64,000 nucleotides of DNA from Glycera tridactyla. Its lineage: Eukaryota. Within the stretch, counting starts at the first letter, position 1; each line of letters starts with the position of its first letter. Below are positions 2,813-59,114 of the stretch, in pieces. The position numbers and the translations under genes are program-made. The notes below the pieces were generated by a model. The model was not told where the DNA came from and ran no database searches. It saw only the letters and a program-made list of their open reading frames with translations. Location: assembly GCA_965644265.1 (NCBI GenBank), contig OZ286465.1:78678001-78742000 (forward strand). Reading direction: 5' to 3'.

Positions 2813-3296
2813 TTACCATCTGGTGATGAGTTAACATAGAAAATTGCTCCAATCGAACATGCAAATTGGCTCCCTTTAGCAAATAACTGTATTTTGATGG
2901 CATGGCTCAGGCAAAGAATGGATGTGCTAAGCATTTTTAATGAGACCTACTTTGTTCAGAAAGTTAACTCATTTATACACAGTTTGTCAAATTAACACCT
3001 GCCCGCCTGCCTGGAGCCAGTAAAATCAAGGTCAAGACCAGTGAAATACATGTACATCATTTCACTTTCACACTGTTCCTCTGAAAATTCATCGAATTCC
3101 CAGCTTGGAAACAATGCAAGCTGTCAAATGTGGTAGAAATAAATATAGACTTGTAGCTTCGATATTTGAACATAGTGGAAAGCTATGGCTCTGACATGTG
3201 TACGGGTTTGCATAACCGATTGTGTATGGGTTTGCATGCCCGATTGTGCACAATAAGTGCAGGCCTGTGCAAAAAAGATGACGATTTTCACATTGA

Positions 3297-4180
3297 ATCC
3301 TCCAAAGTGGGCCATGAAATATTTGAAGATATGTCTCCTTCCCATCATTTTGATCGTGTTTTGGAAATGATAGTTCCAAAATTGAGAGAAGGCTGCCTCT
3401 CTTTGAAGGCCACTTGGAATATTTTAAGGATCGACCGCGGCCTCGCGCCATTGTCGCATCAAACGAACGAAACCTGCGCGTTTTTTGCAGCGTGCGCCCA
3501 CCGGGGCGCATGAAAATCACACAATCTGGCATAGAAATGTCTAAAACTCACTGAAACCGGCAAATTCATCTTCAAAAATTTCAAGATGGCGCCCAAATCC
3601 CGCGCGAACTCTCGCGATCGCAAGAGTATGATGAGATTTCATCCGGTCTAGTTCAGAGACCATCCGTTAGATGTCGAATTTGTCGGTGCGCCACACTCCG
3701 CCATCTGACGGCTCGGACAGGAACCAGACTAACGAGGCACGTGATCAACCCAAAATGGCGGGATGCTCACGAATGCTTACACCTGACGAATGTTTTCATC
3801 ACGTTTATGGCGAAAATATCGTGATTTCCTCAAAAACGACCATGGATTACGCAATTAAGATAACTTATCACCCATTTTGTACGGTGTATTGACACCCGGC
3901 TGTATTTTTAGCATTTCGAGAGCGATCAAAAATCGTGAAAAACACCGTTCAAACGTAACTGATTTGGGCACATAAAATCGCTGACAGGCGCATCAAAGTC
4001 AAAATCAAAGTCAAAAATTATCTCTGCATACACCATGTTTTCCTTGATCCTCCAAAGTGGGCCATGAAATATTTGAAGATATGTCTCCTTCTCATCATTT
4101 TGATCGTGTTTTGGAAATGATAGCTCCAAAATTGAGAGAAGGCTGCCTCTCTTTGAAGGCCACTTGGAATATTTTAAGGA
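3297..4180. repeat. 134-bp direct repeats (3297-3430, 4047-4180) flanking CpG-rich DNA
   Basis: Two substitutions seen between the copies. Confidence 0.9.
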
Positions 4181-6685: not shown

Positions 6686-7694
6686 GTAAGCATATGGTGG
6701 TGAAAAAAAGCCGTATATCAAGTGGTGGTGGTGGTGAGCTCTGCAATCAGAAGGTCTCAATGCATGGACTGTGTTGGTGCTAGGACATTATTTCGTATGG
6801 CAAATTTGGCAAAATCAGCCATTCCATCATTATCAGGTTGCTTATATTTTAGCCAAATGCATAATGAAGTGACTTCAATTTTGCCGTAACTGTCATGTTG
6901 AGGCAGCCGTCGTAAAGTTGGAGGTCTACAAAAAGGTCAGAATCAGCATCTGCACTACAACCCAAATAGATCAAGAGCTGTCAACTTGGATGTTGGTGTA
7001 TACACTCAACTCAGCTCAGGCAAGATGTCTGTTGACTTTGGGGTGGCCATCTTGAATTTCAAGGTCACTGGATGCCAGAAGGTCAAATCACTTTCTAGAC
7101 AATTATTCAGAAGGTTTGAGACTGATCACCTCGAAATTCAGTTTATGCATTCCCCAGAAGCAAGACGCCCATCAATCAGCTTTCTTGTCTGTTTGGACGG
7201 CCATTTCATACTTGAAGGTTACCAAACAATAACTGGCAAAGTTTACATGCAGTCAACTCAACACTGAAGTGATTTGCACATCTTATTGATGTGATGGATG
7301 TCCAAGGTAAAGCAGTATTGTAAATCAATGTTAAATAAACTGCCGTGTCAACATGTCTGTGATAATTGGGTTATTGAAATTATTGCTGTGACATACTTTT
7401 CTTATGGTTGAAAAACTTATCATATTGGTGCAGTCAACTTGACACTGAGATAATTTGCACATCTTACTGATGCAATGAGCATTATTATAATTCATCAAGA
7501 CACTGGAACTATTGTTGTGAAGGTAGAAACCCTGTCTTGTTACATTCTATTTTCATTCCAGTTTCATCCAGTTTTAGAGGGAATCAGTGCGGTAAATCGG
7601 TAAGACATCACCCTATGCAGGATTGCAAATTTATGGCTCATCCTTTCACATTTTAGGCTGAGAGTACTCATTGTAATTATTCTGTTTGTTCCAG

Positions 7695-8033
7695 GAATAT
7701 GACTGTCTAACAAATAAGATCCATGAGCTGCAACTGAAAGAACAGGAGCTCCAGGAACAATTGAGTAATGAACGAGGATCACCACCACCTCCTCCGGAAC
7801 CGCCGACTGGCCCGCCGGTACCCGCCCCTGATGCCGACCAAATGGCGCCACAAGGGGCGGGTACGCCATCAACGCCAAATATGACGCCAAATAGCAGTTC
7901 TGGTAACCTGCCGGCGTATGCCAGTCACCCGCAGGCTGCCCAGATGATGGCGCAAGGGAGTCCGTTACTGCCACCCAAGTCACCCATGAGAACGATGGTC
8001 AAGTGTGACCTACCAAATCAACAAAAGACAGCG
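7695..8033 (+). CDS. raf: Raf exon: BRS coiled-coil C-half, Pro-rich linker, start of RBD ([19 protein letters not shown]...[20 protein letters not shown]), phase 0-0
   Basis: tttgttccag acceptor, GCG|GTAAGT donor; resembles B-Raf YEEYTSKLDALQQREQQL and [20 protein letters not shown]. Confidence 0.93.
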
Positions 8034-11000
8034 GTAAGTGCATATTTTCATCCAATTTGAGTAAATTACGTGTCCAAAATCACTTTTGGCACTATTTTCT
8101 GTAAAGTAGATTCTGGCATCTCTCTTCAATGTCAGTCAGAATTTGACTTGTGTGCCTTGAGAGAAATGCGACATCTTCAGTTTTTCGCACATCAGCCAGA
8201 TCATAATAATATGTGCAGGAGAGTTTTTCATATGTTATGACTGCAGGGCTCTACGCCAAGGGTTGCCCTACTGGCACAGGCAGGCAGGTGTTAGGGCAAG
8301 TGATTTTTCAGCCTGCCTGCCCTTCGGGCAGGTTCTCCACCATTATTTAGGCCATGAATATATGCAGGAGGGCAGGTGAGAATGACAGGGAAGGCAGGTA
8401 AAAATTACGCATCACCTGCCCAAAGGAGGGATGAAGAAAAAAGTGAGTGTAGAGCCCTGCTGACTGCACAAATGACAGAACTATCTCAGACACAGTCGTA
8501 GAAGATCATTGCAATAGCTCTTCATTCTTCTCAAAAAGATTTTTTTGAACAGGCTACATAATCTGATCTCTTGCACCAAGAACGTCATCTTCCCAAGTCT
8601 TTTTTTGCAGACAATTCGCTGCCATTTTTTGTATCCGATTTGTAGTTGAATAGTCAGATATGGAATCGAGGGCTCAATCAGTGAATGAAATGGAATGATA
8701 TCGTATCTCATCAATCGGCACAACACTATCAATCAGTACTCTGCCATACTCAGTCTCTGTATTTAGTCACTCTCTCAAATCCTGGAAAGTATGGATCTAA
8801 TTTTGGGAGAGCGAAAAACGAGTGATGCTCCCAATACACTCTCCCAAAAGGAGTGGGGCTGTCAAACTATTCAATGAAGACTGAATACTGTAAAATATAG
8901 GATGATCGGAAGCTGTTTTAAGAGACCACTTTTTGGTGACATTCTGGGCAGTCTTGTTGCAGTTTTCACTGTACCTGCTTTAGCAGAATTTAGCAGGAAA
9001 TTTTGCTCTAGGTTCAGTGCAGTCATTGGGGATTCCGACTGTGGTTTCTGCATGTGGACTTCCACCTGTTGTGCAGCAACAGCTGTAGGAGTGACCAGCT
9101 GCTTGTTGATACTCGATCAAATGCTCTTGACATCGGCCTGCGAGGTCCCAGATTACTGGTACCCTGGCCTCCACCACTGCAGACCCAGTTGGCAATATAC
9201 AGTAAAACCTGTCTTGATTGAAAAGTCACGGGACCAAATTTTTCTTCCACTTAAGACAGGATTTTGCTTAGCGCAGGACAATTATAGTGAGAAAAAACAT
9301 CCAGGCAGACCCTGGGGTATGTGCTTAAGACAGGATTTCGCCTAGCACAGGTTTACACTCAAGCAGGTTCTACTGTAGTTGGGCTGTCACTACCAATGCA
9401 GCTACATTCTGGATGATTCAGGCAATGGAAGCCAGGTCATCAATTGTTATTGGAAATTGAGCCAGATGAACTTTTGACTTTCACAGTGTTTCACATAAAC
9501 GTAATTTTTATACCCCGCTCTTGAAAAAGCGGAGTATCATAGTTTAACCTCCGGCGTCCATCCGTCCGGTCACGTTTCATGCAATAACTTTGGATTGGCC
9601 AGTCCAATTTTCTTAAAACTTCATGACTGTGTTCAATGTAAAAATCGCATTCCAGAATTTGATTTTCGTACCCATCAAAGGTCAAGGTCACTGGAGCTAT
9701 TTATAAATTTTTGTCTTTTACACCAACTCAAGCTAGCCTTGATGGATATGCACCAAACTCACACAACGTGATAACCCGAGGGTGGACCACCTCCCTTTCG
9801 ATGCATCTGACCCTAGGTCGAAGGTCAAAGTCACAGGATCTATTCATAGACTTTCCAGGAAAATGACTTTCAGAGGCACGAAGTGAGCATTAACGTGTGA
9901 GAGTATACAATACGGCGGCTTTTGATTATGCAACGCTGTTATGACGTCAGAGTGTTTCCCCACAAATGGCACTGTCTTTGACCACCGTGTGTCGCTTCTC
10001 ATAAAATATTTTTTTCTTTCTCAATGTTCTCTCAGTCAGGCATCTACAATATCCACATTCAGCAGTGTTTCAAGCAATAATGAATGTTTTTCACACAATT
10101 CGCTTATTTTTCATGCTGTTTTGGTTTAGCTCATCTTCACCCATGAAGTCGTGCTCTCTGGATCCTATCCCCACCAGTCTCTTCAAAATGTCCTACCCAC
10201 ACCTCTGTCACACACTCAAACAACTGATCAGTGCATCACTTGATGAAGGTGTCATCCCTAACCAATTAACTGAGGCCATGCTCAGTCCCATTCTGAAGAA
10301 AGCCCACCTAGATCCTGATGACCTCAATAACTACCATCTTACCTCTAATCTCCCCTATGTGTCTAAACTGATAGAGAGAGAGTTGTTGCCTCTTAATTGA
10401 ACTCACATTTGTCCAAAAACTCTCTCTGTGAGACCTACCAATCAACATAGCGTGAATATCATTCCACTGAGACTGCTATCATATATGTCCTCAATGATAT
10501 TCTCATGGCCTTAGATGCCCGAAAGTCAATCTGCCTTTTTTTGCCTTGTTCTGCTAGATCCGTCTGCAGCATTTGATACTGTTGACCACACCATCCTCCG
10601 AGACAGACTAGCCAAGTGGATAGGATGAACTGCGCAGCCCGGCTATCAATGTCCTGTCATCACCATCAACCCATCACTCCCATCCTGGAAAAACTTCACT
10701 GGCTTCCTATTGAACACCGGATCACTTTCAAAATCTTGTCCCTGACCTATAAGGCTCTTAACGGCATGGCCCCCAATTACCTGTCATAACTGCTCCATCC
10801 ATACATCCCCTCCCGCTCTCTTCGCTCCTCTGACAAAAACCTTCTAAGTATCCCCAAAACATGCTCTCTGAAACTAAGAAACTTCGCTTTCGCTCACGCT
10901 GCCCCATCTTTTACAACTCACTCCCCATGGACATCAAGCTTGCTCCTACTTTCAACACATTCAAATCTTGGCTGAAAACACATTTGTTCAACATTGCCTT

Positions 11001-14000
11001 CTCTCCATCTTAATTGTCATGTTTCTCTGATTGTCTATTTCAGGTGCATACTGATGTGAAGCGCCTTTGAGCTCAATGAGGAAAAGGCGCTATATTAATG
11101 TCCATTATTATTATTAGTAGTAGTAGTATACCAGCCATTTACAAATGGTTACCCTATAAGTGTGTGAGGTGAACGTACAGTAAAACCTGTGACGAGCGAC
11201 CCCCCAACGAGCGACCACCTCTCTTGAACGACCATTTTTCCCACCACAATACCAAATACTTCTAAAATGACCTCTGATGAGCGACCACCTGTCTAACGCG
11301 ACCAGTGACGGGCCTAAATAGTCCCAATTACCTGCGACAAACGACCACTTGAGGCGAATCGCCATCTTGAACATGGCTGACATGGGCGATAATCAAGTAA
11401 CCGTGTATGAAAGAACTACTCACGATTTTACAAGTTCACGCTTCGCTGCATCAATCCATCATCAGTCTCGTGACGAATTACATGGGCCCCATCAACAACG
11501 AGGATGTGAAATGGCGGGATTTGAATCTGTATCAATGTAAAATCCATCTCCTTTATGAAGGGCTTCAGAAACATATTTCTTATCTATGAAGACGTTTTTC
11601 AGCAGTGTTTATAATAATCTTTCGTTCTATGATGATATTTCTTTGTGGATTCAACATTTCGATCGCAGATTCGTTATTTTCAATGTTGCTAGCGACCGGG
11701 GATACTCGCATAAATTATGCCTAATGAGAGGTTTCCACACCTCGAGATGCCTGTGATGGTTATACGCAGTTCGTTAGACATGGCCGGAAGCGCACGGATT
11801 TCACAGTTTATGGCGAATAACAGTGATTTTGTTACAAATTGGAGAATATGGGTCCCGGGACCCAAGCTTCAGCAAATCAATGGGTCCCACCCCCAACTCA
11901 ATGGGTCCCAAGCCCAACTCAATGGGTCCTACCCAATATATTTATTGCCATTTTACATTCAACACCCGAAAAAAAATGTTCATCATTCAAACGATACAGG
12001 GCAATTTATTTGATAAGCTGGCATTAAACATCTTTCGGAATTTTTTCGAAATTGTCATAGAGGATGAACAAGCCACATTTTTCGAGACATGAGATTCAAA
12101 GAGCATCTTACACTGAATAATAGCGATACTTCCTCATGAATATATTGGTTTTGTCAAGAATGGAGTCTATATATGACCTCTCCATGTGATTTGCGTGTAT
12201 TTCGCGAAACATTCGTTGATTATCAATGTTTTTATTCAGCGAAAGGTTAGTGGGCGATATTGGGAGTATTTGCTATGTAAACATGTGTTCGCGCCCAGGC
12301 CCAGTTGATCGAACCTGCGACCAGCGACCACCTGTCTTGAACGGCCACTTTTTCGTGCTTTTTAGCAGTGATGAAAGTTTTCAGATAATTATCTGAATTC
12401 AGATATTTTGGCATAGATAGCCCACCTTTTCAGATATTTCGATCACAATGAAAATTTCCGGACCAAGACTGATTTCAGATATTTTTCATGATAGCAACTT
12501 TCATCCCTGTTTTAGGGTGGTCGCTGTTCACAGGTTTTACTGTAGTCAAATTGCTCCACAAAATGGACGATAGTTATGTCTAGATTGAGTGGCAATCCCA
12601 TAGTGAAAACATTACCATCTCCAACGGAAAAACATAGGAAATAAATTTTGCAAACATTGACATTTGGTAACTAGTGTGACCTTTCAGCATCTTCCACTCA
12701 AATTCAAAATGGCCATCATACAAAATAACGAACGTCGATGATGTCTTTTGTTGGAATATAAGCAATCGATCGTTTAGTCAGGTAGAAAAAATGGTGAATT
12801 TGACATTTGATATGTGCCCTGTCCTGAAAAGCAAATATAGTCAAACCTCTCTATAAAGACCACCTTCAGTTGGATAAAAAAGGGAGGTGGTCCACTGTTG
12901 AAAATAATGCCACAGTCGCAGCTCAGGGTGGCCTTTAGAGAGGTGGTCTTTATAAAGAGGTGGTCTTCAGAGGAGGTTCTGTAATACAGTAAAACCAACG
13001 ACGAGTGACCCCCAAGGAGAGACCACCTCCGACCGGAGACCCCTTTCCAGGGCAGCTTTTTGATTCGACGTAGACACTGCAAATATACCTCTGACGAGAG
13101 CCCACCTCTTTTGAGAGGTCTCTTGATTGGGGTCTCTCATCATAGGTTTCATTGTATGTCCCAAATTTTGAAGGGAATTGAATTTAATTAGAAAGCTACC
13201 TCGTTCGTATACAATGTCTGAAAATGATGTCAAAAAATTATCGCAATAATGGATGGTAGGCCGACAAGAGATGTGCAGAGAGATTAGATGACCAGGGACC
13301 AGTTATATATGAGGGTATTTGCATAAGCTGTCTGTATTGGTCATGTTAGATACCCTGGTTATTCCCAGAACTGTGGCGGTTGCATGATCGTATGCAATCA
13401 TGTATTTATCTATGTGTATATTCCAGTGTGAGGTCAAGACTGCTATCACAGTTGAACCTGTCTATAAAGGCCACCTTCGATCACATCAAAAAGGGGTCTT
13501 TATAGAGAGATCATTTGATGTTGTAAATACTATCAAAGCTGCAGCTTAGTATGGCCTTAATAGGCAAGTAGTCTTTATAGAGACATCGTCGCTTGGGCAA
13601 GTTTGACTGTATAGTATTATCTAGGCAAGTTGTTTGTAACTTTCATTGGCCAGGAACACACAGCATCCATAATCCTTTGGGTTGATACATGCTGCTAAAC
13701 CTCAAACGAACAAACAAGTGGCCTTCATTGAGGCATGGTAGCTTGAGCAGGTTTGACTGTATTGTATTATGATTTCGAAAAGAAAAAAAAGAGAGAGAGA
13801 GAGAGAGGGAGGGTGGGTGGGAGGGAGGGAGGAAGGGAGGGAGGGAGGGAGGGAGGGAGAGAGTCAATGTGTGCAAATACTGAAATTTTATTCAACTCCT
13901 TTGTATGTGATGGCCACCATCCTTTATTCACCTGTGACTAAGCATATCAGATAATAAATGCCACTATAGTATAGTTGTAGTCATGCTGGTATGTCATCCC

Positions 14001-17000
14001 AGGGGAGGTGTGTGTGGGGGGGTGTTCGGGTATCTGATCTCTGCTGTGCAGGTATTTAGCACCCTCATACTGGTACTGAACTGATGATTGCCTCCTGTCA
14101 CAATAGCTCCACATGACAGCTGGCTACACTTGACAACACCTTGTCCCATCTGCTCTGGTCCCAGCCATTACTAACCATTGTTCTGGCCTGTTATGAAGAA
14201 TAAGATCCAGAATTTGACCTTTATTTCCATATTCTGTGTTGCATCCAGTAGGGAGATGTGCATCAGTCAACACGCAATTGTTATCTTTGGCCACTTTGGA
14301 AAATGATGCTAAGCCAAATCCCCCATATCTTACAGTGAAACCTGCGACGAGAGACCACCTGTGAAGAGGAAGTTTGGAATCCTATCATTCGATTATTGCA
14401 GATATTGGCGTCATTAATCTCAAACATAGCCTCCACTGAAGGCGCCCCTCGCCTGAACGAAGCTAAGTCAAATGCCTCAAATAATGCAACACACAGAGAC
14501 GGAACTCAATTTTCATATATGGCTTGGATCCGTTGTGGCTGATGCTTATTGAAAGTCCGCATATGGCTTGCATTCATTTAGAGGTGTCTAAGGACAGCCA
14601 CCTCCTTTAGAAAAAAATCATCTCTGACAAAGATTTTTTGTCCCCCAAATTGATAGGACTTGTTGAAAGTCCCCATCCATGGCTGGAGTCTGTTATGGAA
14701 TGTGATTGATTGCATCAGTGTCAAGTTTGGTGTGGCTTGGGTGTCATTGGGGATGGTTGGGTTTTAGTGTATTTGTATTGCATATCAAGCAAGCAGTAGA
14801 AATCTTGATTGGTTGCTGATGGTACCACCATGACCACTGTTTAGAACCCTACACACCTGTAGGGCTGTGTGCTTATTGGAAAGAAGAAGACACCTCTGGC
14901 CCTCACCTGCATAGGTGGCCCCTGCCTCTGAGCTGCACCCTTATGACAAGGTGCTGAACAATATAAAAATAGCTCCAACAGGTGACATTGAACCCTGCGA
15001 CAATGAGTAGGGTGGGATCCCCCCCCCCCCACACACACACACATCAGCACCCTCCCTCATAGATGAGGGTCAGTGACAGGCTGGGTGATAATTGGGGGTG
15101 TAGCTACCTGCAGAGACTTCTATGGGAGCATGTGGTCCACCTGACCACCTATTGAGTGAGGGACACCATTTCATGAGTACTTGCTAAAGACATCCTTATG
15201 ATGACAACTGGATGTCTCCATAGTGGATACTTGTGCTTGTAGGAGTAAGACATCAAGTTATCAAGGAAGATCACCTTGCTTGATCCTTATGGAACTTCAA
15301 TTTTGGACATTCTTGTCATTTGGATAGCTACTGTGACTTGCACATTGGATACATTTCGGAACCCCACCATTCAGTTGGATATATTTAAATCTATGTAATG
15401 TCAAATTCCAAGATTCATCAAAGTTTGGATTGAATAGATGCAAATATTGGATTATTCAAGATTGTGGATCTACAAGAGAATATGGAAATATTGTTAAGTG
15501 TGTGAGAATTTCAATGCCAGTCTGAATTGGGTGATATGTCCATGAATTATTGTGGAATATCAACTTCTTTAGGAAAGAAAGTGTGCCTTTGAGTAGTTAG
15601 TCTCCCATTTCTGTTGGTTTCTGTGTTGTATCTTGTCTGTCGGTCTCGGTCTCTGTGTCTGCCTCTCTGTCTGCCTCTCTCTGTCTGTCTTTCTTGGTTT
15701 CACTGCNNNNNNNNNNNNNNNNNNNNNNNNNNNNNNNNNNNNNNNNNNNNNNNNNNNNNNNNNNNNNNNNNNNNNNNNNNNNNNNNNNNNNNNNNNNNNN
15801 NNNNNNNNNNNNNNNNNNNNNNNNNNNNNNNNNNNNNNNTTTTCCACTTCCAATGTCTTGTCCAGCCTTGAGTAATGATGGAATGAACCAGGAAGGAGTG
15901 CAGCCCCTGGAGTAGAAGCATGACTAAATGTTGGGCCTGACTAATAGCCTGGCAGAGTGAGATGCGTAGTACTGGGGGATGTTGAAGATAATGATTCATT
16001 CCAGCTCCCTCTCTCCAACAGCAATTTCCATCCTGTTCGTCATCCATAATCCTTGGATTCTACCATTGGTATATCCTGTCATAGTCATTAGCTATCCAGA
16101 AATTGATGGATTGTACTCATGATAGGCCATAATGGAGTCCATCTTTGTGCATCGGGATTCTTCATGGACTATGTTAAGTCATTACCATGTATCGCTTATA
16201 GCCATACACAGTTCAACCTGCCCTAAGCATGTACTGTACTGAGCAAAAACTTATCTTGCACAACCATGCTGTATAATAATAGCCCAATGGTGGTGGTGGT
16301 GGGGGGGGGGGGGGGGGTAATCTTCTTTTTTATGCTAGTGATCCCAGGACAAAGGTCAAGGTCACTGGATCTATTTATATGTTCTCATATTTCACAGAAT
16401 AACTCAAGTTATCATTGTTGGATATGGACCAATCCAATATGGTATATGATAACCCAATTATGGGACATGTCCTTCAGTATACAGGGCTCATGGTGTGACA
16501 TCTTAACTTCAGTGCTTGTGACCCTCGGTTGAAGGTCAAGGTCACTGCAGCTTCGAATGATCAAAAAAGATGGCATCTATGTACAATTTCAGGGTTTCAA
16601 GTTATGAAGCACTTACTATCTCTGATCTCTATCTCATATTACACATCAGGTGCCACAGCTGAAGGTTTCTTCCAGGATATCTTGATGGAGTTCAAATTTA
16701 TCACCATCATCAGCATCATCTCCAGTATTCATTGATGACACAAACATTTTTATGAAGACTTAGACAGGATTGGACATGCTACTTGGATGACGGATATATA
16801 TGGTTTTGTTTCTGTATGAGATTGAGGTTTACACGATGGTGTTTGAAGGCAGTTGTTGGCGCCATTCATCGGTGGACTGTGACGAAGTTGATGACGAAGA
16901 TGATGAGGTGTTTCATGCAACACCAATCTCGAACAATTCATCTCCGTTGATCTCGCCTCTCTTTGGTGATGTTGCATCTTTTGTGACACCGCCAAGGAAG

Positions 17001-20000
17001 TATTACCAGAAATCATCCCCCTTTCACAATATATTTACTCGGCGGAGATCATTTAAATTGAAGAACAGGAGTTTAAGCTTTGAATCGTCTTCCCAAAAAC
17101 ACATGCCACAATTGATAGGTTCTGGCTCTTTGCCCAGTTCTCCTACAAAACAGCCCTATGGATGCCAATGCAGCCCAAAACAGCAGGTAAGATAAACAGT
17201 CAAACTTGCCCCAAGGGAGACATTTAAAAAGCAATGATCATGACTTGCTCCAATTCACAGGACATTGTTGATCCCATCGGGGTATTTTTCATGAGTAGTG
17301 CCCGGACTTGGTTACAGAAGGGATGATTGATCAATCGAACTCAACAGGGAGTGATCATTGATTGAATATTTGCATCTACCAAAGCACCAAAAATGCAGTT
17401 TAGGTTAGATGGGACCAAATGCTGTGAATCAACTCCACTTACACATTTGATGATCATATTTGTGAAAATGTTCGCCATCGATGTGATGAACTCACTTGGC
17501 AAACAACCTTCTAAGCAGCGTGCTCCGCCATCTTGTACACCCCTGTCAGACTATGGGGGCGAGGTGGCCCATTCCGCATTCTCCATAACTTGTACGATTT
17601 TGGCGGCTGAATTCCGCAATTCCGCATATATGCGCTAAAGTTCCGAATTTCGTCCTGGTCGCGACTTGTCAAAAATAATCAGCAGAAAAAACGAATAACG
17701 AGAAATTGGCGGAAAACGTCTAGTCATTTCGTCATTACGAATGATATTTGGCCATCTTAATTGAGAGCTGCGCAGACGCTTGCCGTGAGACCCGTAAATA
17801 CGTCTTCTGCACATGTTGTTTTCGCGTTAGTTTCCGATAAGTCCGTGATGTGGCGCTGTTCGCGAGCCGATCGCGGCGCCACACGGTGCGTAGTGAGATC
17901 AATGCGAACTATCAGCAGCTTCGTTTTGGTGCGAAAATTTGAATGCCAGTTTCGTGAACATGTCAGATTGACAACCAGTACCCAGTCAAACCTGCTCAAA
18001 CCACTTTCCTACTAATTTTTCATGTTTTTTTAAATCAAATTTTATTTCATATCTAATGTTTTTCAACTAACTCTATATGAATTGGCTATAGTGTCGTACA
18101 GTTTAATGCCATAATACCACTTCTAGACATTGAGAAAGGTTCCTGAAAATTGGTTACAGAAAATGGGCCTGGGTTACTGAAAATGGGGTCTCCAGGTACT
18201 GAAACAGATGTTTGGAGGTTGGCAGCCCTGGGGGGGGGGGGGGCATCTCGTCTAGATTAACCTTGGGTGGCCGGGGTTAACCCTGGCCGATGACCAATAC
18301 AGTTCTCAATTTGTTCACAGATGGTCAAAAAGTGTGTGAGTGTGTGTGCATGGGTGCATATATGCAGTCTCTGGGTCGTCTTTGTCATGGCTGTTGACAC
18401 AGACCGGTCACAACAGGAACAAGACTGAAGCATTGACAGGATGAAGTTGGCACTCATTTTGTTGTCACTCAATGGATACTGCCTGAGAGAGGTTGGCCAG
18501 GTGCCAAAATGCTACCTGAAGATGTGGTCCTGGTTGTTTAATGAAATCCATGGTCTTATCTCATGGTTTCATCTCGGATGACTGGGATATATTGCAGTGA
18601 CTGAAGTTTGCCATGAAATTTTAACATTTAGTGATGATGAACATAAGGAATATTATGAAAAATGCATGGTGTCATTTCATGGATCTTGTTAGATCAGAGT
18701 CCTATGTTCACTTCTATTGTACATTGAGTGGATTTGCAGTGACATCGTATTGACTCCGTGATATCAGTTTCAGGGTCTAGTTCAATGAGCCTAGAGTATC
18801 GAAAAATTGCTGAGAACCGATCTCCCATGGCACTCATTTGGCCTGTACAAAGTTGCCCTTCGGCGTGCACTTAGCCAAAGACCATATCTATATTGTCTGG
18901 AAATCTTGGGACTCTTAACTCAATTCTAGATATTGACATGTGAACATACCCTAATCACAGGGCCCTGCATTGTCCAAAATACTTAGAGGCTAACTGGCTC
19001 CACAGGTGAAATTTTTGGTAGCCAGTGTGAATTTTTTTAACCAGTCAGTATATTGCTAATTACAACTTCTCAAAATATCAGGGGTGGCTGGCTCCTAACT
19101 TCTAAAATATGGTAGCCAGTGGGTAAATTTGGTAGCAATTGCCTAAAATGCTTGATTACCACTATAAAGCCTGATTAATTTTTTGGCATGACTGCAGTCA
19201 AGAATCAGCATCAGAATATCAAATTCTGTTCTGTGTCATAATCTATGTCCAGCATGGATCAAGAACAGTTGGTATTGGTGTTGCATTTAAGAAAATTCCT
19301 TTCTTCAAGTGGAGCTCAAATTTTGAAATTACTTAAGAGACAGCTATCGATAACTCCTGTGATAGAAAACTTAGTTTGAATGAAGCTTATTCACTAATTG
19401 ATGTGAGGTACCCAGGGCAGCTTCCAAGTTTGCATTGTAACATTATTTCAGTGCATGCTGAAACTACCCGTCCATGTTATTTTTCTCATCCTAAGAAGTA
19501 TTTTTCTTGCTTTGGGAAAAATTTGGACACCCTGTTTTGGCTGGCCGGCTGACACTGACACCCTGAGCTCAGTTGAACATGTTTGAAGAACACCTCAGTA
19601 CAGAGTTTACCAAGACAGCAATCGTATGGAATATACGGCAACAAGGAATATTGTTTGCTCATCTTGTGTTATTGTTCGTTATTGGCTGGCTTTTAGCATG
19701 TTTCGATGCACATTGAATCCTATGACAGCACACTGCTTCAAATGCCTCTACAAGAACTGCCTGCTCTGAGAATAATCTTAGTAAACATGATGTGTCTATA
19801 GGAGACAAAGAGAACTTATTAAAGTGGTGCCATCAGTGTTACTTCAGTCATGGAATATGTCTTATTTCTTGAAAGCCACTAGGCCATGCCCTTACAGTGA
19901 CATAAACTTCTGCGGTATCATTAATATTTACATGTATTACAGAGCCTGCTGGACAAGTGTAATCCACCACTTTCACAGAAACAGTTGCATGGAGTCATCA

Positions 20001-23000
20001 CCAAGTGCATGTTCAGGTTCTAATTGTGTTTCAGACATGGTACCAGACAGCGTAATCATCACCACAAAAATGCTGTCTATAAAACTAATGATGCGACGCT
20101 GTCTTCTATGTTTACAGGTGCCGGTTCGACCAGGTGTAACATTAAAAGAAGCTCTTAACAAGGCTATGAAATTACGGGAGCTGAAAGCAGAAAATTGTAT
20201 AGTATATAGATGTTCTCCAAGGTGAGTTACATTAGCATCTGTCGCTCAGAAATGATGAGAAAATTTCATATTCATCATCATTTTTCAACTTTTCATAACC
20301 TCTCCAGTAGAAAAGAACTAGTCTGGTTGGAAGTGTACTCATAAATGAGAGATATATTTTTATCCATGTCTGTATTTGGGAATGCTTAGGTATGAACTTT
20401 TCAATATAATGTGCTGTGAAGTAATGACAAAATCATCTTTCTCATACTGGCAGCACAGGGCAAAGGCATGATGAAAGTTCAACTTCTTCAACAAATACTA
20501 CCATTTGAGCTGTCAACCAATCAGAAAGATTCATTCAATGATAAAAACAGTGCCCTAATGATCTGAAATAGATATTTTACTATCACTGGAGTGGATATCC
20601 CACACACAGTTTTTGCAATGAAAGGGATTGACAAGAGCCACCATTGAAGCTACTTAATATTGCCCACATCTCAGCCATCAACTGTGTGAGTCAGGGAATG
20701 AGGGGTATCAGCCAAACTCATGTGTCCATTCTACGTATTTATCAATGCACATCTCAGCAGAATACTGTATGCATACTATATTTGGACATGAACCTAGATT
20801 TTGGTTCAAATCATAATGTTTGAATTGAGGAAGTGCAATAGATAAACTTTGTCTTAAGAAGTATGTAATTGCATGTACCGTACTATCAATTCCACTTTCT
20901 TGTGACGCTCATTTTTCATGATTTCCTCTGCAAAAATGTGGAAAGAAGTCATTTTTCAGTGTGTGAAATGTGAAATCCAGTCTGTGCTCATTAAACCTGG
21001 TGGCATAAATATCAAAGATGTGTGGTGCCATTAGACGTGTGACCTGCGATTGTGACATAGAATATTGGGATTGTATGTCATCTATACATAAACAAAGTAA
21101 CTAATGTCGGGAACTCAGCAAACGTGAGTAAATACAATGTCGTCACCCGTAAAACAAGGTTGTATTCATTGCGACAATGAGTCCTCTTGTTGCCCATGCA
21201 GTTATAACATTTGTCAATATATTTTCACTTGAGAAATGTGGCAAAAAACCGTGGTCACAAACAAAGTGGAATTGACTGTAGTGTGCAAATTGAGACATCC
21301 GACCCTGAAACAAATCCATGCCAGTGGATTCAGGAGTTCCTATCTTTCACTATTGATTTTATCAATTTGATGAATGAACCCAACCCATATTTCAACTTTT
21401 GTTTCTTATGCATTTCAGAACGATAGTGTCATGGGAGACGGATATTGCTTTACTGGCTGGGCAGGAACTGTCAGTTGAAATGAAAGAACATGGTATTACG
21501 TTCCCACGCACCAGTATATCACATAACTTCGTAAGTTTCCATCAGTCCATCTGATGCCTTTCTCCTCTACTGTGATTTCAACCTTTCAGCCAATGTGTGT
21601 TTGTGATGGATGCAGATTTGCGTAATGAAAATTCTGGAACCTCTTCTGAAGAAATTGCAAGATGATGATGTTGACATATGCATCTGATGACTTTTTTTAA
21701 GGGAAATATGGTACGCCCTGTTATCAATCTATGAATTCATTGCCGCTGTCCACAGATCACTTCTTTTACTTTGACAGTGATCTTAGCCACTCTGCCTTAG
21801 ATTGAATCTCTCTCGAACTTCTGCTGTTGAATGAGTGGAACTGTTAGATCCAACTTCATTTTCTCAGAAGAAAGTTGATTTGTGCATGATTCAGGGTGCA
21901 GTGTCTGCCATCTTGGCAAAGGAAAGCAAGCGGAGGTGGATCTGTGTAGGCTGGAAGCTGAAGTCTTTGTTTGATGCAAAACAAAATTTCAAATTCATTA
22001 ATGATGCATGAAGTAGGAAGTCAGTACAGTGGAACCAGTCATGAGCAACCACCTCTTCTGAACAACTGATTTTTTGCCAATATACCTCATACACTGAAAA
22101 CCTGCAAAGAAAGACTGCTGTAAATCTCCCCCAAAAGTGGCGAAAATTGATGTTTATACAGCAAGAGATTAGTGAGTGTTGTGTACCTGTCTCTCAGGTG
22201 GAGAAGTTCACGGTACACACTCTAGGCTTTGTTGGTGGGAAGCTTTCAAGATCCATCCGAATCCTTTCATCAGCCCTTGGCAAATGCGATTCTTAGCTCG
22301 AATCATGTGACCGCCTGGTGGTGGTGGGGTTCACGTGATGATCTCCTGATACTCAGGAGGGTGTGTCGACCCTGGTCCTGATTGTACCTGTCTTGTGGCT
22401 GGGCACATTTGATCACACCTCTGACCAGTGACCACTTATTTTGAGCACTATATTTTCCATGACAAATAGGGCGGCAGCTCGTGACAGATCTCCCTGGAAT
22501 ACTTGAAGTGGGAAAATCGTCTCTGAAAAGTGTTCCTCCTCAGTAGCATTTTGTTTGATTTTATCATCTCCCTACATTTCTCATTGTACTTACGCCATGT
22601 TTCAAGAAATGCATCTGCTCTGTTTCAGGCTCGCAAGACATTTTTCACGTTAGCATTCTGTGATAGTTGCCGAAGACTATTATTCCAAGGTTTTCGGTGT
22701 ACAACCTGTGGATATCGTTTCCATCAGCGATGTGCAGAGAAAGTACCAACGCATTGTCAGCAAGGTGGTGATGACTTTGATGGAGAGATTGAGATGAGAG
22801 AGCAAGCAAAACAGTATGTCCTTATTTATATTACCTGGTCATCTGCTCATTTCTCTCCAATGTATGCTCTCTCCTTTCTTTCACTTACAGCCGATAATAA
22901 ACCCCCAAAATACAGAAAAATAAATTTTCAAAATATAAAAGCCAAAAAGATTGATAGACTTGCAGTTTACCATTAGGTTTTTTACAGTCCAAGTATTGTC

Positions 23001-50100: not shown

Positions 50101-53100
50101 TTCTTCTCATCACCTCAGTGAATACAAGTGCATTTTTCATTTCCTTCTTCCATTGAAGAACTCTTGTTACTTTGTTTTCCAGAATAATACTGGGAAGACC
50201 AGATGTAATATTTTCTTTCAGTAAAAAAAAGATTTCAAAATGTTCAGCATGAGGTGAATTTTCATAAAAGAAAAAATGAATGCTCGACTGAATATGTTAG
50301 TTCGTGCAATGACCGATACATATTCTGAAACTAAAACAAATCTTTTAGTGTTTATTTGGGTTGTCTTTAAAATTTCTTCCATGTGAAAGATCATGATTGT
50401 GGATTTTCCAGGAGTTGGCTTCGAATAAGTGATATCTAAAATTGAGATTGCCCCAGAAATAAAATGGAAAAATGAGTGTGTTTTCAATTTGAGCTCTGAT
50501 TTCAGAATTGACTGTTTTTTGTCTTTTGTTGTAGTTACCTCCACGCCAAGATGATCATCCATCGAGACCTCAAGTCAAATAGTATCCTTTCGACTAGTGG
50601 TGTCACGATTATCGATTAATTCCCGATTATTGATTGATCTTGGTGGCCAAATAGACAATTGATTGCAGAGATGTGGAATCGATTGAATTGGAACACAGTC
50701 AGCACATATATTTCAATGGAAAATCCAGCCTTTTTTTATGAAAAAAAGCTATGGATTTCCTGTGAAGTCAAAATAATGTCATCTTGCTCCATCCAAAACA
50801 AATCCTATACCCTAGGAGACAACTTTGCATACATCTTTGTATATGTGTGATTGTGGAGACAAAACACCGATTATAATTGATGATCGATCGGTTGGGCTAA
50901 CCGATAATCGATTCTCAAAATGCAACCGATTCCCAACACTACTTTCGACAAACACTCACAAGTAATGATGTCGATATGTTCAGTGGTAGTGAAAGCATAT
51001 TCGATTGGTGGGATTTCTGGATGTTCAAACATTGCAGATCTGGAATATCTTACTCAAGAATTGGACAGCTTTTCTGCTTCATTGATTGTAAGATAGATGT
51101 TGGACATCTCTTTTTGGCACGCATGCGGAGCAAAATGCGTGTCTATGTAATGGCGCAGATTCCGTCTGTCCGGCCGTTTGGCCGTGTGGCGTAAACTTCC
51201 TGGTTAAAGTTTTTGGTTAAAGTTTTTCTTTGAGCTACTACTCTGTAACTAATCAAGCAATATTTCTGAAATTTTGCAATCATAAAGATCATGAGCGGCA
51301 GAATACTGGGTATCAATATTGTTCCAATGACTTTCATGGAAGATGAGTTATTCAGGCTGGAATCCTGAATTTTAAAGCAACTTTCTACCAGCAGAATAGG
51401 AAAGAGTGGACTATATGATGTCTATTACCGAGGCTGTTATGTAATGACACTGCCGGTCCTCTGAATGGAGCCTTGTCACATTTCGTCCTCGGTTATATAA
51501 CTGTCTTTGCACCAAGTGGAGTCTTCACATATCAGCAGAGCTGTCTGATCTCTTGATTGAACTGTGGTGGGCAGGGCAGGAGGTGGGGGCAGCAGCGAGT
51601 GGCCATGGGATGGGGTGGGGGGGGGGGCAGTTGTAGCAGGATTGATTGCACCTGGGTTGGGGGGGGGGGGGGGGGGCTAGGACAGTGAGAACGCTTGGAG
51701 CTACATTCACCAGATTTACACCATATATGCACAATTGAAAGCAAAAGAAGCCCATAAAATGGTGAGTGACCTTGATCTCCATCTCCCAGGTCATGACCTT
51801 GTTACTGCAATTACTTGAGAATGCTTGGAGCAAAAGATTATGCTTGCTAGATTCAGCTGCTTGGATGAATTAGCGGCGCACATGCGTGCCATTTGTGCAT
51901 TTATGCCTTGTTTGACAGGCGTACAGTGACACCTGCAACGAGTGACCGCCCTAAATGTCACCAAAAAGTGGTCTCTCAAAGGAGGTGGTCTCTCGTCAGA
52001 GGTATATTTGACTATGTCAAATAAAAAAGCTGCCCTGGAAAAGGGGTCTCCCGTTGGAGGCAGTCTCTTGTCGGGGGTCTCTCGTCAGGTTTCACTGAAT
52101 CACTGCATTAGTCACAAAAAGATGCATAAATCATATACTTGAGCAGTAAGACAAAGCTTGTTTGCTGCTACAACATGTTCACCTCAATTGTTTATTTGGC
52201 TAGGATGCAAGCACAATGCAGAAAATTGGCGTGTTAACATTATGGGATAAATGAGCAGAGAAGGCTCATGAATCTAATTGTTCCAATCGCAGGTTTCAAG
52301 CTCATTCATGAGTGTGACTATATGAAAGAGACCAAACAATCTTGTCTCAGGGCTCTACACTTAGAGCTGCCCTACTGACACAGACCGTCAGATCTGTTAT
52401 TGAAGCAGGTGATTTTACTGATCAGTCTGCCCAAAAGCGAAAATGGTGGGTGACAATCCCTCTACACCTCTTCAGGCAACAGCTGACCAAAAAGTTAATG
52501 TAGAGCCCCTGGTTGTCATTCTTTGTGATTCTCATTTTTGTAACACTGTCTTTGTCATATGCTCAGTTTCCCTTAACCTGCACCTCAGATATATTCTTGC
52601 ATGATGATATGACAGTAAAAATAGGTGATTTTGGTCTGGCAACAGTGAAGACAAGATGGAGTGGTTCACATCAGTTTTGCCAACCTACAGGATCCATTTT
52701 ATGGATGGTATGTTTTGTTCTCATCTGCCTAGGAACTGAACACATGTGTTTGGACTGCGTTATGTACTTCCACTTAATACCCTCTCTGACCTGCCATCAT
52801 CTTGTGTTTAGGGATTGTGAGAGTGATGCCTGTAGGTGAAAGAGCATCCAGCTTTCATAGATCAGGAACATGTGAAGTACATGGTCCTCTGGGTTAATAC
52901 ATGCTGTTAAATGCCAGCCAATTAATTGATGGTCTTCAAAGATCTATTCATCCTCATAATTTGCATTTATGTATATTCAGTTCACTATGAATTTACAATA
53001 AAACTATATAAAACATCAGATTCAAGCCTTAGTTTCAGTTTGCTCAAATATCAAGAAATAAAACATTATGATTTACAAGGTTTTGTTTCAATTTAATCAT

Positions 53101-53355
53101 ATATTCTTGAGACCTGTGGAGTAGTTGCAGGACTATACTTACGGGGTCTTTTTTCTGTCTTGTTACAGGCTCCTGAGGTGATCCGGATGAAGGAAGAGAA
53201 CCCTTACACGTTCCAGTCTGATGTCTATGCGTTCGGTATAGTTTTATATGAACTCATGACGGGCCAGCTGCCTTACAGACACATCAATAATAAAGATCAG
53301 GTGAGGAATTCATTCACCAACTCTGCTAACTCCAACACCATGCTTCATCTCCATA

Positions 53356-53430
<75 letters not shown>

Positions 53431-58983: not shown

Positions 58984-59114
58984 NNNNNNNNNNNNNNNNN
59001 NNNNNNNNNNNNNNNNNNNNNNNNNNNNNNNNNNNNNNNNNNNNNNNNNNNNNNNNNNNNNNNNNNNNNNNNNNNNNNNNNNNNNNNNNNNNNNNNNNNN
59101 NNNNNNNNNNNNNN
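58984..59114. other. Assembly gap (131 N)
   Basis: N run next to a 79-bp tandem duplication. Confidence 0.99.

What the first reader, a model, noticed from the sequence alone, without database searches (positions are those of the whole stretch)
16836..17186. Intronic 117-aa exon that would splice into the middle of the Ras-binding domain
Seen: open frame 16791-17195, strong Kozak at 16836, and CAG|GTAAGA in phase with VPVRPG (20118). The peptide has an acidic patch ([11 protein letters not shown]), seven S/T-P sites (including PSSP, TPPR, SPTK), RRRSF and RSLSFE. An in-frame stop at 16788 and the lack of a good acceptor favour a first exon. Known: the preceding exon supplies RBD strands beta1-beta2 (LPNQQKT, equivalent to C-Raf Q66/R67/T68) that pair with Ras switch I. 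Inference: a Raf isoform that cannot bind Ras through the RBD but keeps the CRD, CR2 and kinase, regulated instead by proline-directed and basophilic kinases. I know no described equivalent.
Basis: partly seen in the sequence, partly recalled or inferred. Interest (0 to 1): 0.75.

Follow-up and report, generated by a model that had tools for sequence, protein, structure and literature searches.

The report
Possible extra Raf exon, expression unproven
Inside a long intron that splits the Ras-binding domain of this worm's Raf kinase gene lies a 117-codon open frame that looks statistically like a real coding exon, which would give a Raf protein with a broken Ras-binding domain, but I found no RNA, no relatives and no conservation, so it is still a candidate.

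Summary
The + strand is open from 16791 to 17195. There is an ATG at 16836 (A at -3, G at +4) and a CAG|GTAAGA donor after 17186. The exon would be 351 nt in phase 0, matching Raf exons that end at 8033 and start at 20118. The intron falls inside RBD strand beta2, between the C-Raf 69 and 70 equivalents.

Chance looks unlikely. The donor is among the four strongest of 3667 GT sites on the + strand. Simulated sequence gives about 0.013 such ORF-plus-donor cases per 64-kb strand. In this frame only, the peptide has 17.9% Ser and seven S/T-P sites. None of 72 real null ORFs reach that Ser level, and 0.24% of 3328 simulated ORFs do.

Independent support is missing. The peptide has no Pfam family and no true homologue among 1.84 billion representative proteins. 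Two relatives have only 156 and 161 nt at the same intron. No RNA run was listed, so junction reads could not be checked. The upstream DNA is CpG-poor and lacks a good acceptor.

My estimates: about 0.45 that it is a lineage-specific alternative 5' exon of Raf, and about 0.3 that it is a chance ORF. The proposed regulation and Ras-independence are untested inference.

The parts
7695..8033 (+). Canonical Raf exon (113 codons, phase 0 to 0). It encodes the coiled-coil/linker region and RBD beta1 plus the first half of beta2, and ends LPNQQKTA|gtaagt.
   Evidence: acceptor ttccag|GAATAT at 7694/7695. Seven relatives found.
8034..20117 (+). The 12,084-nt phase-0 intron that splits the RBD. It contains an N gap at 15707-15839, which I left untouched.
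   Evidence: The same intron position is 156 nt in L001 and 161 nt in L002.
16788..16790 (+). In-frame TGA that closes the frame upstream.
16795..16801 (+). TATATAT, a TATA-like run 35-41 nt upstream of the ATG at 16836. Reading it as a core promoter element is inference only.
   Evidence: Read from the sequence. No TSS data.
16819..16826 (+). Two weak GAG acceptor candidates (AG at 16819-16820 and 16825-16826). Either would give an in-frame 366- or 360-nt cassette.
16836..17186 (+). Candidate coding exon: 117 codons, ATG with A at -3 and G at +4, a Ser/Pro-rich disordered-type peptide.
   Evidence: Composition tests. AlphaFold2 gave pLDDT 53.9 and no secondary structure.
17187..17195 (+). Donor GTAAGA followed by an in-frame TAA (17193-17195).
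   Evidence: Score 7.2 bits on a rough consensus matrix, among the top 4 of 3667 GT sites on the + strand.
20118..20221 (+). Shared downstream Raf exon (VPVRPG...). It covers the rest of RBD beta2, alpha1 and the following strands.
17587..17986 (.). CpG island (o/e 1.71, 37 CpG) 400 nt downstream of the candidate donor. It is context, and I cannot show that it belongs to the exon.

Best explanation
The open frame at 16836-17186 is a real, lineage-specific protein-coding exon that arose within an expanded RBD intron of the single B-Raf-like gene. Most likely it is an alternative 5' exon. In this model transcription starts a few to a few tens of bases upstream of the ATG at 16836, the exon is translated from that ATG, and its strong phase-0 donor splices to the shared exon at 20118. 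The product would replace the normal N-terminus (coiled-coil/linker plus RBD beta1 and half of beta2) with a 117-residue disordered Ser/Pro-rich segment. It would keep the C1/CRD, the hinge and the kinase domain. With an incomplete ubiquitin fold, the RBD remnant should not bind Ras-GTP. What is shown: the frame, the signals, the phase, the position inside the RBD, and the non-random composition. What is inferred: transcription, splicing, translation and any regulatory role.
For: - Donor and ORF: the donor scores 7.2 bits. It is among the four strongest of 3667 + strand GT sites, and no - strand site reaches it. Nearly all + strand donors scoring 5 bits or more that have a long open frame upstream are Raf exons or candidate cassettes. 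An open frame of at least 117 codons with such a donor in its last 12 codons is expected 0.013 times per 64-kb strand in simulation. None of the simulated cases also had a strong-context ATG.
- Composition: Ser 17.9%, seven S/T-P sites, polar fraction 0.658. The 72 non-exonic ORFs of this window give Ser 9.6 +/- 2.8% (none reach 17.9%), S/T-P 1.06 +/- 1.59 (one reaches seven) and polar 0.524 +/- 0.058 (two reach 0.658). Those outliers are simple-repeat DNA at 115-1141. Among 3328 simulated ORFs, P(Ser) = 0.0024, S/T-P of seven or more occurred 0 times in 3328, and P(polar) = 0.0003.
- The composition is frame-specific. Base composition is ordinary (pyrimidine fraction 0.516, 58th percentile). 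The other two frames have 6-7 Ser, 0-1 S/T-P and 6 and 9 stops. The values resemble the canonical Raf linker exons.
- CpG o/e is 0.64. Most canonical exons lie between 0.59 and 1.13 (one short kinase exon has none), and the 800 nt upstream lie at 0.18-0.26.
- There is no repeat copy in the window and no tandem repeat.
Against: - No RNA evidence.
- No Pfam or NCBIfam match. No homologue of 64-205 aa. No true homologue among 1.84 billion representatives: the four hits are tandem-repeat proteins whose weak stretches add up. Nothing in JGI metagenomes. The neighbouring canonical exon found seven relatives.
- In two relatives the homologous phase-0 intron is 156 nt (L001) and 161 nt (L002) and holds no such exon.
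- A position-specific nucleotide and codon score does not separate the candidate from null ORFs (24 of 72 score higher). The same score also fails to separate known exons.
- The 800 nt upstream are CpG-poor, unlike the probable main promoter at 3.2-4.0 kb. Several short upstream ATGs would precede the start unless transcription begins within about 45 nt of it.
- A protein carrying half an RBD is an awkward design.
Confidence: 0.45

Rival explanations
1. It is a chance open frame in a young, expanded intron. It is not transcribed as an exon, and the donor match and the composition are coincidences picked out by a reader who scanned many windows.
For: - Open frames of at least 117 codons are common here (23 on the + strand, 15 on the - strand).
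- No relatives, no family and no RNA run.
- The intron is only 156-161 nt in two relatives, so the DNA here is lineage-specific.
- The codon score is no better than for null ORFs.
- The upstream DNA is CpG-poor.
- The scan looked at hundreds of windows of this genome, so per-window events at the 1% level will turn up.
Against: The joint rarity is hard to reach by chance. ORF plus donor is expected about 0.013 times per strand, and the frame-specific composition has P of about 0.002 or less. The DNA is not low-complexity.
Confidence: 0.3
2. It is coding sequence that does not belong to a Raf isoform. It could be the first exon of a separate gene nested in the intron. It could also be a relic copy of an exon from another, fast-evolving gene that keeps its donor but is no longer used.
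For: - The coding-like composition and the donor fit this reading equally well.
- A CpG island lies at 17587-17986, close by, with promoter-type AAGATGGC motifs and a - strand donor at 17496. This shows that something other than Raf exons may be active in this intron.
Against: - No follow-on exon was recognisable between 17187 and 20117. The ORFs there have no family.
- No parent protein was found in any database.
- The phase-0 match to the next Raf exon would then be a 1-in-3 coincidence.
Confidence: 0.15
3. It is an internal exon of transcripts from the main Raf promoter. One version is an in-frame cassette using the GAG acceptors at 16820 or 16826, inserting 120-122 residues into RBD beta2. 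This cassette could also be mutually exclusive with exon 7695-8033. The other version is a frame-breaking 'poison' exon using the better acceptors at 16713 or 16725.
For: - Both GAG acceptors are in frame, and the frame is open from them to the donor.
- Exon 7695-8033 is also a phase 0-0 exon of similar size.
- Pyrimidine-rich CAG acceptors lie at 16713 and 16725.
Against: - G at -3 is the least used acceptor base (general knowledge of splice-site consensus).
- The good acceptors are out of frame and run into stops at once, which would not explain the coding-like composition.
- The strong-context ATG would then be a coincidence.
Confidence: 0.1

Closest known systems
B-Raf(V600E) splice variants lacking the RBD exons (exon 4-8 skipping) in vemurafenib-resistant melanoma (PMC3775402, PMC5426037)
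   Same: A Raf protein that keeps the kinase domain but has lost Ras binding through a change in exon usage.
   Different: Those variants are somatic, tumour-selected exon-skipping products. [quoted passage not shown] The product proposed here would be germline-encoded and made from an alternative 5' exon. It would remove only RBD beta1 and half of beta2, keep the C1/CRD, and add a new 117-residue N-terminus.
DA-Raf1 and A-Raf short isoforms (PMC2064279, PMC3775402)
   Same: Natural alternative isoforms of a Raf gene that change how the Ras-binding and kinase modules are coupled.
   Different: They are the mirror image. They keep the RBD, lose the kinase, and act as dominant-negative Ras binders.
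N-terminally truncated or fused oncogenic Raf (v-Raf, KIAA1549-BRAF type fusions).
   Same: The regulatory N-terminus is replaced by foreign sequence while the kinase is kept.
   Different: Those forms remove the whole of CR1 (RBD plus CRD) and usually CR2, and they are constitutively active. Here the CRD and hinge would be retained, so autoinhibition may persist.
Alternative first exon of the TIA-1/TIAR gene in this same genome
   Same: An alternative 5' coding exon that splices in phase 0 to a shared exon and removes the first domain.
   Different: That exon is reported as conserved and spliced in related species. I could not obtain such evidence here. It is an AI note that I did not check.

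Membership tests
Raf family kinase gene (host gene) | Raf-like Ras-binding domain | tested here: met
   PF02196 at E=5.3e-10 on exon 20118-20222. The exon aligns to B-Raf 169-200 and C-Raf 72-101.
Raf family kinase gene (host gene) | C1/cysteine-rich domain followed by a Ser/Thr kinase domain | tested here: met
   PF00130 at E=1.7e-12 in 22527-22973. PF00069 at E=4.4e-11 in 53097-53534. The DFG and APE motifs are visible in the translations.
Alternative 5' (first) coding exon | Start codon in good context, with an open frame up to a donor in phase with the shared exon | tested here: met
   ATG 16836 with A at -3 and G at +4. 117 codons. Donor of 7.2 bits in phase 0, matching the phase-0 acceptor at 20117/20118.
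Alternative 5' (first) coding exon | Own transcription start or promoter | tested here: inconclusive
   A TATA-like run lies at 16795-16801. However, the 800 nt upstream have CpG o/e of 0.18-0.26, and the nearest CpG island lies downstream at 17587-17986. No CAGE or 5' end data were available.
Alternative 5' (first) coding exon | Spliced reads joining its donor to the shared exon | not testable with these tools
   The single run search listed no run, so read laying had no run ids to work with.
Alternative 5' (first) coding exon | Conserved open frame at the same place in relatives | tested here: not met
   The homologous intron is 156 nt in L001 and 161 nt in L002. The best tblastn hit of the peptide in L001-L004 has E=0.3. 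Both relatives are distant (45-53% identity in the neighbouring exon). No close relative was available.
In-frame cassette exon | Pyrimidine tract plus YAG acceptor in frame | tested here: not met
   The only in-frame acceptors are GAG, at 16820 and 16826. The CAG acceptors at 16713 and 16725 are out of frame.
Repeat- or transposon-derived ORF | Multiple copies, or a match to transposon protein families | tested here: inconclusive
   No second copy in the 64-kb window. No Pfam match. No true hit among 1.84 billion proteins. The rest of this genome could not be searched.
Chance ORF | Composition and flanking signals typical of non-coding open frames | tested here: not met
   Ser, S/T-P and polar content lie outside 72 real and 3328 simulated null ORFs, in this frame only. 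The donor is among the top 4 of 3667.

The most novel reading that the evidence does not exclude
This animal makes a germline-encoded Raf isoform from an internal promoter. Its N-terminus is a new disordered phospho-acceptor segment and its RBD is disabled, while the CRD, hinge and kinase are kept. This would be a natural Ras-uncoupled or differently recruited Raf, the physiological counterpart of the RBD-less forms known only from tumours and viruses.
Probability: 0.2. Interest if true: 0.7.

Novelty: new variant of a known kind. Interest (0 to 1): 0.42.

Why it matters
Raf kinases are thought to depend on Ras binding through an intact RBD. Forms that lack it are known as oncogenic accidents (PMC3775402). 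A naturally encoded isoform that swaps the N-terminus and breaks the RBD while keeping the CRD and kinase would be a ready-made natural experiment. It could show how much of Raf autoinhibition and activation needs the RBD. It would also be an example of a new coding exon arising in an intron that grew from about 160 nt to 12 kb. If the frame turns out to be silent, the case is still useful as a calibration: strong donor and composition statistics alone would then have produced a false exon.

Tried and rejected
- RNA evidence. The look-up of sequencing runs with 16780-17190 (kind rna) listed nothing. The cap is one search, so I could not run the same search on a canonical exon as a control, and read laying could not be used.
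- Exact-product look-ups for the ORF from either ATG found nothing. The canonical exon read as an ORF was also not on record. This genome therefore has no ORF-type calls in that collection, and the blank means nothing.
- Word search with the peptide found no hit.
- The big search gave four hits that I rejected. They are long tandem-repeat proteins whose many stretches of about 24 bits add up.
- The JGI metagenome scan matched 204 patterns, and none was confirmed.
- A word search with the RBD2 exon as an anchor, meant to fetch more relatives' introns, found no candidate.
- Relatives P0001-P0004 and P0007 sit on metagenome contigs of 505-2625 nt that end before the next exon, so they were no use for the intron.
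- The position-specific nucleotide and codon score was rejected as a test. It does not separate known exons from null ORFs in this weakly biased genome.
- An Rfam search on the intron found nothing. Pfam on six other intronic ORFs found nothing.
- An intragenic duplication origin was rejected. The peptide has no similarity to other parts of the window.
- A pyrimidine-rich DNA explanation for the Ser/Pro content was rejected.
The N stretches were left as they are.
Full report
**What is there**

The + strand is open from 16791 to 17195, which is 134 codons from stop to stop, with an in-frame TGA at 16788-16790. An ATG at 16836 has A at -3 and G at +4. A second in-frame ATG lies at 16800. The frame ends at cagcag|GTAAGA, with 17186 as the last exon base, and an in-frame TAA follows two codons later. 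The stretch 16836-17186 is 351 nt, or 117 codons, so the donor is in phase 0. The listed motifs are all present: the acidic run, seven S/T-P sites, RRRSF and RSLSFE.

**The host gene**

The window carries one B-Raf-like gene on the + strand.
- Exon 7695-8033 ends ...LPNQQKTA|gtaagt in phase 0.
- Exon 20118-20221 begins tttacag|VPVRPG and matches Pfam RBD at E=5e-10.
- A C1 domain lies at about 22.6 kb, and kinase exons lie at 52.5-54.3 kb.

Against solved structures, residue 1 of the downstream exon aligns to B-Raf 169 and residue 3 to C-Raf 72. The 12,084-nt intron therefore falls between the equivalents of C-Raf 69 and 70, inside strand beta2. Any transcript that enters the gene through this intron would encode an incomplete RBD.

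**Is it more than chance?**

Length alone means little. There are 23 open frames of at least 117 codons on the + strand and 15 on the - strand.

The donor is unusual. On a rough consensus matrix that I wrote from memory, it scores 7.2 bits. That places it among the four best of 3667 GT sites on the + strand, and none of 3229 sites on the - strand reaches it. Nearly all + strand donors of 5 bits or more that have a long open frame upstream are Raf exons or candidate cassettes. In 150 simulated 64-kb sequences, an open frame of at least 117 codons with such a donor in its last 12 codons occurred 0.013 times per strand. It never occurred together with a strong-context ATG.

The peptide composition is the strongest point.

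| Measure | Candidate | 72 non-exonic ORFs of the window | 3328 simulated ORFs |
|---|---|---|---|
| Ser fraction | 17.9% | 9.6 +/- 2.8%; none reach it | P = 0.0024 |
| S/T-P sites per 117 aa | 7 | 1.06 +/- 1.59; one reaches it | 0 of 3328 |
| Polar fraction | 0.658 | 0.524 +/- 0.058; two reach it | P = 0.0003 |

The real-sequence outliers are simple C/A-rich repeats at 115-1141. This is not a base-composition effect. The pyrimidine fraction is 0.516 (58th percentile). The other two frames carry 6-7 Ser, 0-1 S/T-P and 6 and 9 stops. The candidate's values resemble the canonical Raf linker exons.

CpG o/e within the frame is 0.64. Most canonical exons lie between 0.59 and 1.13 (one short kinase exon has none), and the 800 nt upstream lie at 0.18-0.26. 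That is mild support at most, because a CpG island lies nearby. A position-specific nucleotide and codon score was uninformative, since it does not separate known exons from null ORFs either. AlphaFold2 without an alignment gives pLDDT 53.9 and no secondary structure. This fits a disordered segment, but it would also be expected for a non-protein.

**Relatives**

The peptide has no Pfam or NCBIfam family and no word-search homologue of 64-205 aa. A full HMMER pass over 1.84 billion representatives gave four hits. All four are long tandem-repeat proteins whose many weak stretches add up, so I count them as spurious. A scan of JGI metagenomes confirmed nothing.

As a control, the neighbouring canonical exon found seven ORF-type relatives. 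Two of these sit on contigs that reach the next exon.
- In L001 (an ENA assembly contig of 27 kb), the homologous phase-0 intron between ...LPNQQKTT|gtgagg and ccag|VQVRP is 156 nt.
- In L002 (NCBI GCA_013332715.1), the intron is 161 nt.

Neither has room for the exon, and tblastn of the peptide against all fetched loci gives nothing better than E=0.3. The exon is therefore not an old feature of this Raf. Both relatives are distant, at 45-53% identity in the neighbouring exon, and both have an extra intron there. No close relative with a long contig was available. A young, lineage-specific exon is not excluded. A disordered segment would in any case be hard to recognise at this distance.

**Expression**

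None was listed, which is not the same as none exists. No reads could be laid, and I could not run a canonical exon as a control. Earlier notes on this genome mention RNA support for other genes. I therefore treat the blank as a weak negative for a gene that is probably expressed at a low level. Exact-product look-ups were blank for the candidate and for the control exon alike.

**Anatomy of the 5' side**

The only in-frame acceptors are two GAG sites, at 16820 and 16826. The better CAG acceptors at 16713 and 16725 are out of frame. This favours a first exon over a cassette.

A TATATAT run at 16795-16801 would place a start at about 16825. That would leave the ATG at 16836 as the first AUG, on a very short leader. 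A start further upstream would put several short upstream ATGs (16752, 16776, 16787) ahead of it. This is inference only.

The upstream DNA is CpG-poor. The probable main promoter at 3.2-4.0 kb is CpG-rich. The nearest CpG island, at 17587-17986, lies downstream of the donor and carries AAGATGGC motifs on the - strand. It does not help the first-exon model and may mark an unrelated antisense or nested unit.

**Reading and odds**

I put about 0.45 on a real, lineage-specific alternative 5' exon of Raf that splices to 20118. I put about 0.3 on a chance frame. The selection of this frame from a scan of many windows, together with the lack of any independent support, keeps the chance reading alive. 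I put about 0.15 on coding sequence that is not a Raf isoform (a nested gene or a relic exon), and about 0.1 on an internal cassette or poison exon.

If the isoform exists, it would lack the normal N-terminus and RBD beta1 plus half of beta2, so it should not bind Ras-GTP through the RBD. It would keep the CRD, hinge and kinase, so autoinhibition could persist. The new segment would offer proline-directed and basophilic phospho-acceptor sites. All of this is inference from the sequence and from general knowledge of Raf. None of it was tested.

**Comparison with what is known**

RBD-less B-Raf forms arise by exon skipping in drug-resistant melanoma and dimerise without Ras (PMC3775402, PMC5426037). 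DA-Raf1 and A-Raf short are the opposite design, with the RBD kept and the kinase lost (PMC2064279, PMC3775402). A paper search for an alternative first exon that disables the Raf RBD returned only one paper, on an unrelated gene family. If real, this would be a new variant of a known kind, not a new kind.

**Limits and rules**

- The spliced model (candidate exon joined to the downstream Raf exons) was neither built nor searched. Exons were searched one by one by reference.
- The N stretches at 15707-15839 and 58984-59114 were left untouched.
- The rest of this genome could not be searched for further copies of the ORF.

Noticed in passing
window 17587-17986: A CpG island (o/e 1.71, 37 CpG, in a genome averaging 0.46) lies in the RBD intron, 400 nt downstream of the candidate donor. 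AAGATGGC (YY1-like) motifs sit on the - strand at 17534 and 17758, and a - strand donor-like site is at 17496. It may be an antisense or nested promoter, or a young insertion.
   Followed up: partly
window 8034-20117 versus L001 1214-1369 and L002 1115-1275: The same phase-0 intron inside RBD beta2 is 12,084 nt here but 156 and 161 nt in two relatives. The intron position is old and its size here is a lineage-specific expansion. SINE-like repeat families (D5, D6, D9-D12, D14) are scattered through the introns of this gene.
   Followed up: partly
L001 about 797-1053 and L002 about 274-928: In both relatives the exon equivalent to 7695-8033 is split by an extra intron that is absent from this window.
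   Followed up: no
window 3201-4000: A CpG-rich block (o/e 1.0-1.55) with AAGATGGC on the + strand at 3583. It is probably the main Raf promoter or 5' exon region.
   Followed up: no
window 11201-12400: A second CpG-rich block (o/e about 1.0-1.1) in the same intron overlaps repeat family D6 and an ORF with no family match (11717-12013). It may be a young mobile element.
   Followed up: no
It could therefore join in frame to exon 7695-8033, to an in-frame acceptor of the candidate exon, or to 20118.
   Followed up: partly
window 16298-16317 and seven other places (family D8): Runs of 14-20 G recur through the window. One lies 500 nt upstream of the candidate exon.
   Followed up: no
P0008-P0011: The only 'significant' hits of the big protein search were long tandem-repeat proteins whose many weak stretches sum to a good whole-sequence score. 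This artefact is worth remembering when querying with short disordered peptides.
   Followed up: yes
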